Shown: positions 28,701 through 38,016 of the stretch, piece after piece
Layout of the letters: the number at the start of each line of letters is the position of its first letter
Numbering within the stretch: the first letter of the stretch is position 1
NCBI RefSeq assembly: GCF_006345805.1
Contig: NC_043022.1
Location: 18,724,001 to 18,788,000, forward strand
From: Octopus sinensis
Taxonomy: Eukaryota
DNA length: 64,000 nt
Direction: 5' to 3'
Translations under genes and position numbers: made by a program
The notes under the pieces: model-generated
The model's database searches: none
What the model saw: only the letters and a program-made list of their open reading frames with translations
What the model was told of the DNA's origin: nothing

Positions 28701-31700
28701 AAGCACCATCTGTTCGTGGCCGTTTGCCAGCTCTGTCTGGCACCAGTGCGGGTGGCACGTAAAAAGCACCCACTACACTCACGGAGTGGTTGGCGTTAGG
28801 AAGGGCATCCAGCCGTAGAAACACTGCCAGATTTGACTGGGCCTGATGAAGCCTTCTGGCTTCACAGACCCCAGTAGAACCGTCCAACCCATGCTAGCAT
28901 GGAAAACGGACGCTAAACGATGATGATGATGATGATGATGATGTATGTATATATATATATATATATATCTATTATATATATATATATAATATATATATAA
29001 TATATATATATATGTGCATACATAAATATATATATATGTATATATATATGTATATATATATGTACGTACAGATATACATATACATAAACCTATACACTGT
29101 CACTAAGTGTTATGGCTGTTTATACAACTTACCACTAAAACTTAAAAGTGTGTTGGAGCTGGAAGGGTTTGTTGTGGGGAGGGTGTGTAGATGTCTGCTG
29201 TAAATGGTAAAAGCCAAATTCCATGTTTCTTCTTTTCTTTCTTCTGCAGAACCATGCTGCAATGAACGTAAGTAATAACTTCTTCACATATTAAGACAAA
29301 CTAAAGAGGGAGTCAACAAATGGTTAGTTAACCTGCTAGAAATAGCAAGTCAGATGCCCATCAAAGTGTACTTTTCTGACTTGAAAATATGAAGGACACT
29401 CTAGGTAGTGTATACACCGTGTCAGAGTAAAAGACACAACACATTAAATGATGTAGTTCTGGATACACTATGCCAAAATAAAATGCAGGATACATTTGAT
29501 GATTTAGTCTTAGATACACTATGTCAGAATAAAAGAACAGGCTACATTAGATGATGTTGTCTTAGATACTCTATGCCAGAAAAAACAACTGGATACATTA
29601 GATAATGTTGTCCAAGATACACTATGCCTGAATAAAAGACAAAGCACCTTCGATAATGTAACCCCAGGCCAAAACTGAACCAGTTGGCCTATAGGCCATT
29701 ATTAGTTACGCACCATCGTACAACATTGGCAATTCTACATTTGATCTTTGTCTTGAAGAAATGTATTATATAATTACCTCTAAATTAATTTTATTAAATT
29801 TTAATGGGAATTTTATAATGAAATGCTGTCACAAATTTCATAAGGCATTTAAATATTTCAATCATAATGAAGTGATTCTCCTCTATTTTCTTTTACCCAA
29901 AACCAGGAACTCTCCAGCCTCCCTCATGTGGATGTATATAAATATACATATACATACACGCACACACTCACATATATACATATATATACACACATATAGT
30001 AGAGTAATAAAAAGAAAGATCTTTGTACAGTATTATATATTTGAAAAAAGGAGGTAGCATTTTTTTGATAATTTTTATTTTAATACTAATGTTTATAAAA
30101 AGCCATCTCTCCTCATTTTTTCAAATATTTCTATACATATACATATATATAACTCAGGTAATGCATAAATATATTATAATATAACAAACAAAAGAAAAAA
30201 CAATTCCCTCAAAGGGATTGTCAATTGTATTTCTCTATCAATTTATTATTTGTAATTCATATATACATATATATATATATGTGTGTGTGTAGTGTTCAAA
30301 TTTACAGAAAACAAAAGATGAAGGCAAGCGAAGGAACAACATACAGGTCTATTAGTTTAATGCGCTGGAAGAATGGAAAACTCTTTAATGTTTCGAGCCT
30401 ATGCTCTTAGACAGAAGGAATTAAGAGTAAAAAAAAAACTGAGAGAGAGGAAAAAGAAAAATGTGTAGGGATTAATGGTTTGACGTGATGTTTGAATATT
30501 TTTTGAAACTGCCATTATTCTATGTTTCTTTTTTCCAGAAAAGAGACATGACAACAGCTACCAGGAAATTGGTGAGTCAAGATTCCAGTGTGATATTTTT
30601 ACATTCATAGTTATGACAGCATGGTCGTGGTCGAAACGCTTTCATCATATGTTTGCTGGATCGAAGATGACCTGGGGCTAAACAAGGAAGGACACATTGG
30701 AGAATGTAATCCTAGATACATTATGTCGAAATAAAAGGTGACATAGTAACAACAGCAAACATGCACACACACACACACACACACATTGATATATATGTGC
30801 GTGTATGTGTGTGTGTGTATGGCAAGTAGTACACTTTGTAAAGTGGTTGGTGTTAGGAATGGCATCTAGCTATAGAAACCCTTCCAAAACAGACCAGTAG
30901 AGCCTGAGCAGCTCTCCAACTGGCCAACACTTGTCAAACTGTCCAACCCATGCCAGCATGGAAAACAGATGTTAAAAAATGATGATGAAAATGATGACAT
31001 TTTGGTCAGCATTCATCCATCCACTCTCACTACCTCCATCCACTACAAACACACAGACTCACAGTCACCCTAAACACACAAAGCTTTCCATTCCCTGTTC
31101 CCAATTCCTCTGTATACGCAGGCTCTGCTGTGACAACCATGATTTTGAGACTCAGTCTCAACTCATGGCTCACCACTTCATCCTACATGGATATCTCCTC
31201 ACCACTAGTCACACTCCCTTGCTAGAGCATGTTCCATGGACCATGTATCTACTCTCTCCCCTTGCACCCACCCTGCTGTCACCCATCTCCTGTTTCCCCT
31301 CACCTACCACCCCACCACCTTATTTCTCCAACACACCATTCTCTGAGCCTTCTGGTGACTCCAGTCAGAACCCTCCACTTTTCACATCTTCCCTAACCGA
31401 CCCCTCCCCTCCTTCAAACAAGCCCACAACCTACGAGACGTCTTGGTCCACAGCTTCTTCTCTAACCCAACCTCCCAACCTGGCTCATTCCCCTGCTCCT
31501 GCCCATGCTTCCGTACTTGTCCTTACCTCTCCAACACCACCCTCCTCACAGGCACCCATCATTGACCCTATTATATCACTAACTCCTTCACCTGCACTTC
31601 TAATAACGTCATCTATTGCATCTCCTGCTCTCTCTGTCCTTCTCTATACATTGGTCAAATGGGATGCTGCTTGGCTGACAAGTTTGTGGAATCACCACTA

Positions 31701-37700: not shown

Positions 37701-38016
37701 ATATATATATATTATACATATATATATATATATATATTATATATACATATATATATATATATATATATATATACATATATATATATATATATATATATAT
37801 ATATACATATATAATATATATATATATATATATATATACATATATATTTTGTGTGGTGGTCATGGCTAATACCAACACCCCATACTACCATCCCCAGCAC
37901 CACCAATGTGATATTACCCTTTCTGTGTCTGACTAAGATTTCATTTCTTCTTTACAGCTCAGTGTGTGCATTATACTCAGCCAATGAACAAGACAAGGAA
38001 CAGGGAATACATGTAA
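4666..38016 (+). CDS. Gene A: TNFR-superfamily-like type I membrane receptor, 14 in-window coding exons, 504 aa (5'-incomplete, signal exon not found)
   Basis: All 14 exons are flanked by AG/GT, phases match at every junction, summed length is 1515 nt (divisible by 3), and there is a single terminal stop. The spliced protein has the order Cys-rich repeats - S/T/P stalk - TM - cytoplasmic tail. The first four exons have paralogous exons in gene B with identical phases. TNFR assignment is from Cys spacing (CxxGxY..C, CxPCPxGT, CQPGQEL..GxCxxC, DCT..G.....GN.T....C), not from a database search. Confidence 0.85.
5273..5404 (+). CDS. Gene A exon E3: [44 protein letters not shown], phase 1-1
   Basis: ttttctAG|gt ... 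acag|GTaaat; 132 nt; TNFR-like CxPCPxGT; paralog at 59538-59669. Confidence 0.92.
6590..7585. repeat. 14-bp minisatellite (AAGCTACACTCACC)n, ~70 copies
   Basis: Directly visible; ends just upstream of the gene A E4 acceptor. Confidence 0.95.
7624..7749 (+). CDS. Gene A exon E4: [42 protein letters not shown], phase 1-1
   Basis: ctcattctttAG|at ... cgag|GTaggt; 126 nt; paralog at 62753-62881. Confidence 0.88.
9160..12030. repeat. ~2.9-kb (GAT)n-derived microsatellite with higher-order ~36-45-bp periodicity
   Basis: Recurring gatgatggttatgatgataatgatggtgatgacaat; lies in gene A intron E4-E5. Confidence 0.95.
12076..12148 (+). CDS. Gene A exon E5: [24 protein letters not shown], phase 1-2
   Basis: ctccctgtctgcAG|gt ... 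gtcga|GTaagcc; 73 nt; paralog at 63481-63553 with the same donor. Confidence 0.88.
13501..13583 (+). CDS. Gene A exon E6: [28 protein letters not shown], phase 2-1 (last Cys-rich repeat)
   Basis: ccttcttcctttttcAG|t ... tccc|GTaagt; 83 nt; resembles the DCT..G....GN.T.D.IC membrane-proximal CRD pattern of TNFRs. Confidence 0.85.
14045..14285 (+). CDS. Gene A exon E7: Ser/Thr/Pro-rich stalk ([23 protein letters not shown]...RENALDLF), phase 1-2
   Basis: Long pyrimidine tract, ttgaaAG|ca ... tttaa|GTaagt; 241 nt open; GC-richer than its flanks. Confidence 0.8.
14577..18070 (-). mobile_element. Penelope-like element (RT + GIY-YIG endonuclease), near full-length but frameshifted, in gene A intron E7-E8
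   Basis: ORF 15489-16859 has RT motifs [19 protein letters not shown] and RYIDDI; 15466-15723 has GIY-YIG-like [25 protein letters not shown]; N-terminal parts lie in other frames; terminal (pLTR-like) sequence ~14580-14800 also occurs at ~30300-30480 and ~31740-31950. Confidence 0.88.
19096..19239 (+). ncRNA. Hammerhead-like motif with palindromic stem III and long stem II insertion
   Basis: ctct-CTGATGA ... GAA-ACAGCTGT-A-agag; stem II closure not clearly paired. Confidence 0.35.
19430..21530. repeat. Large (TA)n/(TG)n compound microsatellite fields (also ~1247-1320, 4250-4560, 18070-18370, 23850-24100, 37630-37850)
   Basis: Directly visible. Confidence 0.95.
21540..22688 (-). mobile_element. 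5'-truncated CR1/L2-like LINE (RT C-terminal part) ending in (AACT)n
   Basis: [37 protein letters not shown] motifs. Confidence 0.88.
22992..23056 (+). CDS. Gene A exon E8: transmembrane exon [22 protein letters not shown], phase 2-1
   Basis: ctccttcacAG|a ... gtct|GTaagt; 65 nt; the only hydrophobic exon found with the required 2-1 phases. Confidence 0.8.
23591..23608 (+). CDS. Gene A micro-exon E9 (18 nt): YIVRIK, end of TM plus positive-inside residues
   Basis: (ct)n tract ... cacaaaacAG|acattgtaagaataaaac|GTaagt; phase 1-1. Confidence 0.62.
24185..26720 (-). mobile_element. RTE-like LINE fragment whose internal ~260-bp segment is tandemly amplified 7x
   Basis: Units start near 24190, 24450, 24711, 24970, 25233, 25493 and 25753; each encodes [41 protein letters not shown]. 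Confidence 0.85.
26040..26488. mobile_element. MITE with ~40-bp terminal inverted repeats, TATA target duplication and a microsatellite interior
   Basis: ggcata(c/g)aaataaatttcttttgcccttgtttataagttg at both ends, inverted; removing it plus one TATA restores the LINE frame LLSAYKLER. Confidence 0.8.
27906..28940 (+). mobile_element. RTE-clade LINE 3' end plus 3'UTR with short tandem subrepeats and a (GAT)n tail
   Basis: [20 protein letters not shown]...[13 protein letters not shown]...GRGRPRKTW; related pieces at 169-281 and 56620-57190. Confidence 0.85.
29250..29267 (+). CDS. Gene A micro-exon E10 (18 nt): QPCCNE, juxtamembrane di-Cys
   Basis: tttcttcttttctttcttctgcAG|aaccatgctgcaatgaac|GTaagt; phase 1-1. 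Confidence 0.68.
30539..30571 (+). CDS. Gene A exon E11 (33 nt): [11 protein letters not shown]
   Basis: tttcttttttccAG|aa ... attg|GTgagt; phase 1-1. Confidence 0.72.
30979..31950 (+). mobile_element. Degenerate 3' fragment of the same Penelope-like family with pLTR
   Basis: [32 protein letters not shown] matches [32 protein letters not shown] in the 15.5-16.9 kb ORF. Confidence 0.82.
32541..32675 (+). CDS. Gene A exon E12: [45 protein letters not shown]
   Basis: tttccttctgagcAG|at ... atca|GTaagt; 135 nt open; phase 1-1. Confidence 0.78.
33272..33403 (+). CDS. Gene A exon E13: [44 protein letters not shown]
   Basis: tttttctttgtttcatttcAG|tc ... ccac|GTaag; 132 nt open; phase 1-1. Confidence 0.75.
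34757..35133 (-). mobile_element. Short 3' fragment of the same CR1/L2-like LINE family
   Basis: Near-identical to 21560-21920 ([23 protein letters not shown]...KWPELFT). Confidence 0.85.
35991..36305 (+). CDS. Gene A exon E14: [26 protein letters not shown]...[15 protein letters not shown]
   Basis: ttctctttctaatcacattctgttaatgaAG|gt ... cacc|GTaagt; 315 nt open; phase 1-1. Confidence 0.78.
36688..36990 (+). mobile_element. Another tRNA-derived SINE family
   Basis: B-box gagttcgaatccc followed by a SINE-like core (gtgttctttagcaaaatacttt) and 3' tail. Confidence 0.6.
37068..37542. mobile_element. Two adjacent copies of the piggyBac-type MITE in the last intron of gene A
   Basis: Each is TTAA-flanked with CCCTTT/AAAGGG ends. 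Confidence 0.78.
37958..38016 (+). CDS. Gene A terminal coding exon E15: [19 protein letters not shown]
   Basis: tttcatttcttctttacAG|ct ... atg TAA; phase-1 start; AATAAA ~180 nt downstream. Confidence 0.7.

What the first reader, a model, noticed from the sequence alone, without database searches (positions are those of the whole stretch)
29250..38016. TNFR-like ectodomain coupled to a tyrosine-motif signalling tail instead of a death domain
Seen: a ~230-aa low-complexity tail with 13 Tyr and no predicted helical death domain. Motifs are DNSYQEI (acidic YxxI), RPLPKKP, YMEM, LPPIY, PRQES (formed across the E13/E14 junction), EEEYNAL, VSYPSL, YIQQ, YSPP/YTQP and a juxtamembrane CC. Established consensus matches: RxLPxxP class I SH3 ligand; YxxM PI3K-p85 SH2 site; PPxY Nedd4-type WW ligand; PxQE/PxQxS-T TRAF2/3 site; VxYxxL ITIM; YxxQ STAT3 site; juxtamembrane Cys palmitoylation. 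Vertebrate TNFRs signal mainly via TRAF motifs or death domains. Inference: a hybrid TNFR/costimulatory-inhibitory receptor that integrates TRAF with phosphotyrosine signalling.
Basis: partly seen in the sequence, partly recalled or inferred. Interest (0 to 1): 0.75.

Follow-up and report, generated by a model that had tools for sequence, protein, structure and literature searches.

The report
Octopus TNFR-like receptor's disordered signalling tail
The region holds the last six exons of an octopus cell-surface receptor gene whose long, unstructured inner tail carries a few short docking motifs that are conserved in another octopod. It is a real but ordinary-looking receptor whose signalling is still only a hypothesis.

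Summary
Six canonical exons (29250-38016, + strand) splice into one 229-aa frame with 13 Tyr and every listed motif. That frame is identical to residues 17-245 of Octopus sinensis LOC115224825. NCBI annotates this tail as a separate 245-aa gene. I find it belongs to a larger gene: seven upstream exons (4666-23608) encode three Cys-rich repeats, an S/T/P stalk, a transmembrane helix and a YIVRIK stop-transfer microexon, all phase-compatible with exon 29250. An Argonauta hians protein joins stalk, TM and a homologous tail in one CDS. Its exons match one-to-one, including both 18-nt microexons, and homologous Cys-rich exons lie just upstream. The tail has no death domain (Pfam) and is predicted to be disordered.

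- Conserved: RPLPxKP, Y[MV]EM, PxQES, NxYQxI and PIY.
- Not conserved: the PPxY, ITIM (VSYPSL), STAT3 (YIQQ), EEEYNAL and YTQP readings.

The "TNFR" label for the ectodomain is weak. There is no Pfam TNFR_c6 hit and no PROSITE match, and hhalign to TNFR1 gives only 17% probability. Most vertebrate TNFRs also lack death domains. Verdict: a real receptor and a split annotation, with a plausible but untested TRAF + SH2/SH3 tail.

The parts
4666..4750 (+). Gene A Cys-rich exon ([28 protein letters not shown]-); first coding exon found in the window, signal-peptide exon(s) not found
   Evidence: AG/GT sites and phase; paralogous exon in gene B at 56431-56515
5273..5404 (+). Gene A Cys-rich exon ([27 protein letters not shown]...CYKNDCPT-)
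   Evidence: 57% identical exon in Argonauta L002 1448-1584, E 4e-13
12076..12148 (+). Gene A Cys-rich exon ([24 protein letters not shown]-)
   Evidence: Argonauta L002 ~8705-8779, E 4e-7, same phases
13501..13583 (+). Gene A Cys-rich exon ([28 protein letters not shown]-)
   Evidence: collinear weak match in Argonauta L002 ~9078-9160 with the same phases
14045..14285 (+). S/T/P-rich extracellular stalk exon
   Evidence: a T-rich stalk precedes the TM in Argonauta P0003
22992..23056 (+). Transmembrane exon, 65 nt ([22 protein letters not shown]-)
   Evidence: Argonauta TM exon is also 65 nt with the same phases
23591..23608 (+). 18-nt microexon, stop-transfer YIVRIK. The upstream 362-aa gene call ends at stop 23803-23805, in the frame that reads through this exon's donor
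   Evidence: Argonauta 18-nt microexon YIIRRK
29250..29267 (+). 18-nt microexon QPCCNE (juxtamembrane Cys pair); first exon of the finding. NCBI starts LOC115224825 at ATG 29204, inside its polypyrimidine tract
   Evidence: Argonauta 18-nt microexon CKVPKK
30539..30571 (+). Tail exon with DNSYQEI (conserved NxYQxI)
32541..32675 (+). Tail exon with RPLPKKP and YMEM (both conserved) and PVPYI
33272..33403 (+). Tail exon with SSPY, LPPIY and the PR- half of PRQES; absent from isoform X2
35991..36305 (+). Largest tail exon: -[24 protein letters not shown] (7/7 conserved), EPARVHP, NYSPP, HYIQQ
37958..38016 (+). Last coding exon ([19 protein letters not shown], stop TAA)
   Evidence: the Argonauta gene also stops in its homologous last exon
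56431..56515 (+). Gene B (tandem paralogue), first Cys-rich exon
59538..59669 (+). Gene B, second Cys-rich exon
63481..63553 (+). Gene B, third Cys-rich exon; the rest of gene B lies beyond the window

Best explanation
Bases 29250-38016 are the six 3' exons of one long gene (gene A, at least 4666-38016, + strand) of Octopus sinensis. The gene encodes a type-I membrane receptor made of:
- three Cys-rich repeats with a TNFR-like cysteine framework;
- an S/T/P-rich stalk;
- one transmembrane helix;
- a basic stop-transfer (RIK) followed by juxtamembrane Cys;
- a ~230-aa intrinsically disordered tail with no death domain.

NCBI's annotation cuts this gene in two, a 362-aa upstream product and the 245-aa LOC115224825.

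Shown: the gene structure, its conservation in Argonauta, the absence of a folded domain in the tail, and which motifs are conserved.

Inferred mechanism: ligand-driven clustering of the ectodomain brings tails together. The tails then act as an adaptor-docking scaffold through the conserved islands. These are a CD40/OX40-type TRAF site (PxQES followed by acidic GEE), a phosphotyrosine site of the CD28/ICOS type (Y-[MV]-E-M) next to a class-I SH3 ligand (RPLPxKP), and a membrane-proximal YQxI that could be an SH2 site or an AP-2 sorting signal. The proposed ITIM, STAT3 and WW (PPxY) sites are probably species-specific chance matches.
For: - Thirteen exons with AG/GT sites join without a stop into a 462-aa ORF, and all 12 junctions are phase-compatible.
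- The tail equals XP_029651612.1 residues 17-245. The annotated start codon at 29204 lies in the pyrimidine tract of a strong acceptor.
- The upstream gene call ends at 23805, the first in-frame stop after read-through of the 23608 donor.
- Argonauta hians GAB1602265.1 (P0003) has stalk, TM and a homologous tail in one CDS (phmmer E 6.5e-7; BLASTP E 2e-15). It has a 65-nt TM exon and two 18-nt microexons, as in Octopus. Homologous Cys-rich exons lie upstream on the same strand.
- Genes A and B keep all 13 Cys and their splice sites, with dN/dS 0.47.
- No Pfam domain is found in the tail, and AF2 pLDDT is 42.6.
- The conserved islands coincide with RPLPxKP (6/7), Y[MV]EM (3/4) and PxQES (4/5) against 36% background identity. 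Six of 13 Tyr are conserved.
- [PSAT]x[QE]E occurs 3 times, P = 0.015.
- The motif consensus and usage in CD28, ICOS, OX40, CD27 and 4-1BB are described in PMC12536988.
Against: - No transcript evidence was available for the 23608->29250 junction, and NCBI keeps two genes.
- The signal-peptide exon was not found in the window.
- The ectodomain fails Pfam TNFR_c6, PROSITE PS00652 and PDB sequence searches. hhalign to TNFR1 gives only 16.9% probability. The AF2 model is too poor for fold comparison.
- Motif conservation rests on a single second species.
- Each motif is short enough to arise by chance.
- No binding or phosphorylation data exist.
Confidence: 0.5

Rival explanations
1. The conserved tyrosine and proline motifs are trafficking signals, not signalling sites. 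YQxI, and perhaps YIIS/PIY, would be YxxPhi signals for AP-2 endocytosis, and the tail would mainly control surface level, recycling or degradation of a decoy or scavenger-type receptor.
For: The most membrane-proximal conserved Tyr sits in Y-Q-x-I, a perfect YxxPhi, about 17 residues after the membrane. Established knowledge: AP-2 mu2 binds YxxPhi in disordered tails. Nothing shows that the tyrosines are phosphorylated.
Against: Y[MV]EMG and RPLPxKP are not sorting signals, and both are conserved. PxQES followed by an acidic run matches the TRAF consensus. The PPxY that would recruit Nedd4 is not conserved.
Confidence: 0.2
2. The ectodomain is not a TNF receptor. It would be another kind of Cys-rich repeat (Ephrin_rec_like / GCC2_GCC3-type) on an octopod-specific receptor with an unrelated ligand, so the TNFR framing and the TRAF reading fall away.
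For: Pfam gives only sub-threshold Ephrin_rec_like hits in all three ectodomain sequences (best E 0.0018; 12 bits against a cut-off of 23.1) and no TNFR_c6 hit. PROSITE PS00652 does not match. There are no PDB sequence hits.
Against: hhalign puts CPRGQL / HCPAGSY / CxxCxSG in register with CRD1-2 of TNFR1 (E 0.0015). NNHYKYW...C resembles TNFR1 CRD3 NQYRHYW...C (by eye, against the sequence checked). Eight of the 14 weak Foldseek matches are HVEM, CD40 or UL144, though all have E > 1. The CRDs-stalk-TM-PxQE architecture is that of TRAF-type TNFRs.
Confidence: 0.25
3. NCBI's annotation is right. LOC115224825 would be an independent gene making a soluble, disordered 245-aa protein from its own promoter, and the upstream receptor would end at 23805.
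For: This is the annotation in the O. sinensis record. Two isoforms are modelled, which suggests transcript support for the tail exons.
Against: The proposed start ([16 protein letters not shown]) is a translated pyrimidine tract in front of a consensus acceptor. The upstream model ends by intron read-through. The phases fit. Argonauta joins TM and tail through the same two microexons.
Confidence: 0.07
4. All motif matches are chance features of a fast-evolving disordered tail that acts only as a spacer or has no signalling role.
For: Single-motif P values are 0.16-0.63. No homologue outside Octopoda was found among 1.84 billion representatives.
Against: There are sharp conservation islands (7/7 SETALKV, 6/7 RPLPxKP, 6/9 VPYIISSPY) in a 36%-identical background. 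The tail's length and exon structure are kept in two octopod families.
Confidence: 0.1

Closest known systems
TRAF-binding, death-domain-less TNFRSF members (CD40, OX40, CD27, 4-1BB, HVEM)
   Same: Type-I topology, several Cys-rich repeats, a stalk, a short basic juxtamembrane stretch, and an unstructured tail with a (P/S/A/T)x(Q/E)E site. PRQES/PCQES compare with CD40 PVQET (from memory) and OX40 PIQEE (PMC12536988). No death domain.
   Different: The tail is much longer (~230 aa) and Tyr-rich (5.6%), with a conserved Y[MV]EM and RPLPxKP. The CRDs do not reach Pfam or PROSITE thresholds: the spacing is CC-x5-C instead of CC-x2-C, and there is an extra Cys.
CD28 / ICOS costimulatory tails (IgSF)
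   Same: YxxM (CD28 YMNM, ICOS YMFM) combined with proline-rich SH3 ligands in a short disordered tail (PMC12536988).
   Different: Those receptors have Ig ectodomains and ~40-aa tails without TRAF sites. Here the motifs sit on a Cys-rich-repeat receptor. This is a resemblance in how it may work, not homology.
Invertebrate TNFRs (Drosophila Wengen/Grindelwald; mollusc and cnidarian TNFR-like proteins)
   Same: Many lack a death domain and have few, divergent CRDs (bioRxiv 10.1101/2024.07.27.603686). The same preprint reports six lineage-specific TNFSF ligands in Octopus vulgaris, so candidate ligands exist.
   Different: No sequence similarity to them was tested or found here. The tail has homologues only in Argonauta.
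Argonauta hians GAB1602265.1 (hypothetical protein, partial)
   Same: Orthologue or close homologue: stalk-TM-tail, the same exon structure, and 36% tail identity with conserved motif islands.
   Different: It is annotated without its Cys-rich exons, which lie upstream in L002. It lacks the C-terminal HYTQP...REYM, the ITIM-like site and the YIQQ site.

Membership tests
TNF receptor superfamily | Cys-rich domains recognised by Pfam TNFR_c6 (PF00020) | tested here: not met
   No hit at E<=10 for the 462-aa model or for the A, B and Argonauta ectodomains
TNF receptor superfamily | PROSITE TNFR/NGFR signature PS00652 (pattern recalled from memory; it finds 3 CRDs in human TNFR1 as a control) | tested here: not met
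   No match in A, B or Argonauta. Only a relaxed pattern (L for the aromatic, CC-x5-C, extra Cys) matches CRD1
TNF receptor superfamily | Detectable homology to a solved TNFR ectodomain | tested here: inconclusive
   phmmer/hmmsearch against PDB: nothing. hhalign against TNFR1 (sequence verified against 1ext): probability 16.9%, E 0.0015, Cys in register over 57 columns
TNF receptor superfamily | Elongated A/B-module disulfide ladder fold | tested here: inconclusive
   AF2 of the gene B ectodomain: pLDDT 39.3. Foldseek best E 2.9; the weak hits are mostly HVEM, CD40 and UL144
TNF receptor superfamily | Type-I membrane topology (signal peptide, single TM) | tested here: inconclusive
   TM exon 22992-23056 plus RIK stop-transfer found. 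No signal-peptide exon found in the window
TNF receptor superfamily (TRAF-binding group) | (P/S/A/T)x(Q/E)E TRAF-binding site in the tail | tested here: met
   SYQE, PRQE and SGEE present (P = 0.015 in shuffles). PxQES conserved in Argonauta. Binding itself not tested
TNF receptor superfamily | Binds a trimeric TNF-family ligand | not testable with these tools
   Needs biochemistry or a multimer model
Death receptors | Cytoplasmic six-helix death domain (PF00531) | tested here: not met
   No Pfam hit. AF2 shows no helices except one 4-residue turn. The CDS stops at 38016, and at the homologous exon in Argonauta
ITIM-bearing inhibitory receptors | [ILVS]xYxx[ILV] that is functionally retained | tested here: inconclusive
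   VSYPSL is present in O. sinensis (one match; 0.55 expected by chance), but the Tyr is absent in Argonauta
CD28/ICOS family | IgV ectodomain plus YxxM tail | tested here: not met
   YxxM is present and conserved, but the ectodomain is Cys-rich repeats with no Ig domain
Ephrin_rec_like (PF07699) repeat proteins | Pfam hit above the gathering score | tested here: not met
   Sub-threshold in all 3 sequences; best E 0.0018; 12.1 bits against a cut-off of 23.1 for gene A

The most novel reading that the evidence does not exclude
Octopods evolved a lineage-specific, tandemly duplicated receptor family that fuses a TNFR-type ectodomain to one disordered tail. That tail combines a TRAF site with a CD28/ICOS-like pYxxM + SH3-ligand module. 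It would be a natural counterpart of the CD28 + 4-1BB/OX40 combinations engineered into third-generation CARs, giving an invertebrate TNF pathway direct access to PI3K and phosphotyrosine signalling.
Probability: 0.15. Interest if true: 0.6.

Novelty: new variant of a known kind. Interest (0 to 1): 0.4.

Why it matters
If the model holds, an 'uncharacterized protein' of Octopus sinensis becomes the signalling half of a receptor, and two database gene models should be merged. It would give cephalopod immunology a concrete TNFR-like receptor pair (genes A and B) to match with the expanded octopus TNF ligands. It also gives three short, conserved, mutable motifs with which to test whether invertebrate TNFR-type receptors can use phosphotyrosine/SH3 adaptors as well as TRAFs. 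The result is of moderate interest. Death-domain-less TNFRs are the rule rather than the exception, the TNFR assignment is weak, and all function is inferred from motifs.

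Tried and rejected
Both returned nothing, so its sequence was never seen.
The ectodomain could therefore not be searched against the 1.84-billion library, and gene A's ectodomain could not be folded. Gene B's ectodomain was accepted but folded poorly.
- A poly-T-derived 'TM' reading of 13960-14124 was rejected in favour of the S/T/P stalk exon 14045-14285, which fits the phases and resembles Argonauta.
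- Scans for a signal-peptide exon upstream of 4666, including exons adding up to the 65 codons missing from the 362-aa model, found nothing convincing. The A/B similarity at 1122-1247 / 52744-52881 looks like a repeat, not an exon.
- No Pfam scan of 38017-56300 for a death-domain exon was run. Only the ORF list was checked, and it shows nothing. The absence of such an exon rests on the stop codons in Octopus and Argonauta.
- Literature searches found no paper on LOC115224825 and no report of a TNFR-family receptor with a YxxM tail.

Full report
**What the window is.** The tail peptide is identical to an Octopus sinensis RefSeq protein, and the DNA maps to chromosome record CM016884.1. The window is typical cephalopod DNA: AT-rich, full of (TA)n-like runs, minisatellites and retroelement fragments.

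**Checking the observation.**
- The six exons 29250-29267, 30539-30571, 32541-32675, 33272-33403, 35991-36305 and 37958-38016 all have AG acceptors behind pyrimidine tracts and GT(A/G)AG donors. Five of them are multiples of three.
- Together they read as one 229-aa frame that stops at 38016.
- The peptide equals residues 17-245 of XP_029651612.1, 'uncharacterized protein LOC115224825 isoform X1'.
- Counted from the stop-transfer, the tail is 233 aa with 13 Tyr.
- It has no Pfam domain, so no Death or TIR domain. AlphaFold2 predicts no structure: pLDDT 42.6 and one 4-residue helix.
- It is not low-complexity in the strict sense (19 residue types, 4.08 bits). It is P/S/Q-rich and disordered.

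**Is it attached to a receptor?** NCBI treats the tail as its own gene, starting at ATG 29204. That start codon and the next 15 codons ([16 protein letters not shown]) are simply the pyrimidine tract and AG of a strong acceptor read as protein. The same collection holds an upstream + strand gene call of 362 aa that ends at window 23805.

I rebuilt the upstream part from the sequence:
- Three Cys-rich exons (4666-4750, 5273-5404, 12076-12148) are shared with a tandem paralogue, gene B (56431-56515, 59538-59669, 63481-63553). All 13 Cys and all splice sites are kept, and dN/dS is 0.47.
- A fourth Cys-rich exon lies at 13501-13583.
- An S/T/P-rich stalk exon lies at 14045-14285.
- A 65-nt exon, 22992-23056, encodes [14 protein letters not shown].
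- An 18-nt microexon, 23591-23608, encodes YIVRIK.

All junctions, including 23608->29250, are phase-compatible. The 13 exons give a single 462-aa ORF with this order: CRDs, stalk, TM, RIKQPCC, tail. The stop at 23803-23805 is the first in-frame stop if the 23608 donor is read through. This explains where the 362-aa model ends. I could not retrieve that protein, so this last point is an inference.

**Independent support from another octopod.**
- A full HMMER scan of 1.84 billion representatives with the tail found one real homologue, Argonauta hians GAB1602265.1. It is partial, 354 aa, E 6.5e-7; pairwise BLASTP gives E 2e-15.
- That single CDS contains a T-rich stalk, a TM helix, RRK and a homologous tail.
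- In its locus (L002) the CDS maps onto exons that match the octopus ones one by one: a 65-nt TM exon, two 18-nt microexons (YIIRRK, CKVPKK), a short exon holding NYQTI, and so on.
- Upstream, on the same strand, lie unannotated exons homologous to the octopus Cys-rich exons, with the same phases. Against the second, third and fourth exons they score E 4e-13, 4e-7 and 0.21.

I therefore regard the one-gene model as well supported (about 0.9). It still lacks transcript proof in O. sinensis. The signal-peptide exon was not found and probably lies beyond the window start.

**Are the motifs more than chance?**
- Shuffling the tail shows that each single match is unremarkable: P = 0.26 for SH3, 0.29 for YxxM, 0.16 for PPxY, 0.43 for ITIM and 0.63 for YxxQ. 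The exception is three TRAF-type [PSAT]x[QE]E matches (P = 0.015).
- All six classes occur together in 0.1% of shuffles, but they were picked after the fact.
In the Octopus-Argonauta alignment the tail is 36% identical (83/233), with sharp islands.
- Six of 13 Tyr are conserved.
- Not conserved: PPxY (HPIY in Argonauta), EEEYNAL (no Tyr), the ITIM VSYPSL (no Tyr), HYIQQ (FHMIDP), YTQP and the C-terminal REYM.
- The Cys pair is represented by a single Cys at a different place.
- Isoform X2 lacks exon 33272-33403, and with it PIY and the P of PRQES. Its implied acceptor is not a canonical AG, so I give it less weight.

**Is the ectodomain a TNFR?**
- The framework (CPxGQL...CC...CPxGSY...C; CxxCxxCPSGT...F...C; CxxCxNNHYKYW...C) looks like TNFR A/B modules.
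- The formal tests fail or are weak. There is no Pfam TNFR_c6 hit, only sub-threshold Ephrin_rec_like in all three sequences. There is no PDB sequence hit with a single sequence or a 3-sequence profile.
- There is no PROSITE PS00652 match, while the same pattern finds three CRDs in TNFR1.
- hhalign against human TNFR1, whose recalled sequence I verified against 1ext, gives 16.9% probability and E 0.0015, with Cys in register over CRD1-2.
- The only ectodomain the tool would fold (gene B) gave pLDDT 39.3. The Foldseek hits are all non-significant, although 8 of 14 are HVEM, CD40 or UL144.
- So 'TNFR-like' describes the architecture, not a demonstrated membership.

**How it most likely works.**
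- Shown: a type-I Cys-rich-repeat receptor with a long disordered tail, no death domain, and conserved short motifs.
- Inferred: it works like the TRAF-binding, non-death group of TNFRSF, whose consensus is (P/A/S/T)x(E/Q)E, as in OX40 PIQEE and CD27 PIQED (PMC12536988).
- On top of that it has a CD28/ICOS-like YxxM plus proline-motif module (same review) that could recruit PI3K-type SH2 and SH3 proteins after tyrosine phosphorylation.
- The membrane-proximal YQxI may equally be an AP-2 sorting signal.
- The 'inhibitory' (ITIM), STAT3 and Nedd4/WW readings are not supported.
- Octopus has candidate ligands: six lineage-specific TNFSF paralogues are reported in O. vulgaris (bioRxiv 10.1101/2024.07.27.603686).

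**Novelty and score.**
- TNFR-type receptors without death domains are common in vertebrates and invertebrates, so the headline contrast is not surprising.
- What is new: the two database models appear to be one gene; the tail is an octopod-restricted sequence with no other homologue among 1.84 billion representatives; and it conserves a TRAF + YxxM + SH3-ligand combination not described for TNFRSF in the papers I could search.
- All function is motif-based inference, and conservation is checked in one other species.
- I rate it a new variant of a known kind, interest 0.4.

Noticed in passing
window 4666-38016 (gene calls ending at 23805 and starting at 29204): The public annotation seems to split one receptor gene. 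The upstream 362-aa call ends at the first stop after read-through of the 23608 donor, and LOC115224825 starts inside the intron before exon 29250.
   Followed up: partly
window 56431-64000: Tandem paralogue (gene B) about 51.8 kb downstream. Its first three Cys-rich exons are intact: 66% aa identity to gene A, dN/dS 0.47, all Cys kept. Its TM and tail lie beyond the window. Gene A's annotated product may therefore differ from my model somewhere in the ectodomain.
   Followed up: partly
window 15492-17767 (-), 21623-22543 (-), 24100-26070: Retroelement debris lies inside the long introns. There are reverse-transcriptase ORFs on the minus strand (Pfam RVT_1, E 9e-8 and 5e-6), and a tandem array of ~260-bp units carrying a LINE 3' fragment sits between the two 18-nt microexons.
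   Followed up: partly
window 6600-7500, 9100-12000, 1373-3600: Large minisatellites: a ~28-nt unit and a ~42-nt unit (reading DDNDGDD / MMVMT in different frames) fill the 6.7-kb intron between the second and third Cys-rich exons. A ~373-bp tandem repeat lies upstream of the gene.
   Followed up: no
P0004 (523 aa, source unknown) vs window 33272-33403: The representative search also hit a protein made of nine ~57-aa tandem repeats. Each repeat contains LSQPPGGYGHLLPILYEKH, which resembles the tail's [19 protein letters not shown]. It could be chance or a repeat-derived relative of this exon.
   Followed up: no
window 35975-35990: Isoform X2 (P0002) replaces exon 33272-33403 by NSVNEG, read from the bases just upstream of 35991. 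The implied acceptor dinucleotide is AC, not AG, so this isoform may be a modelling artefact.
   Followed up: partly
L002 1448-9160 (Argonauta hians BAAFZT010000022.1): The Argonauta homologue is annotated as a 5'-partial protein. Its Cys-rich exons lie unannotated within 9 kb upstream on the same strand. No exon matching the first octopus Cys-rich exon was found in the 1.4 kb available upstream.
   Followed up: partly
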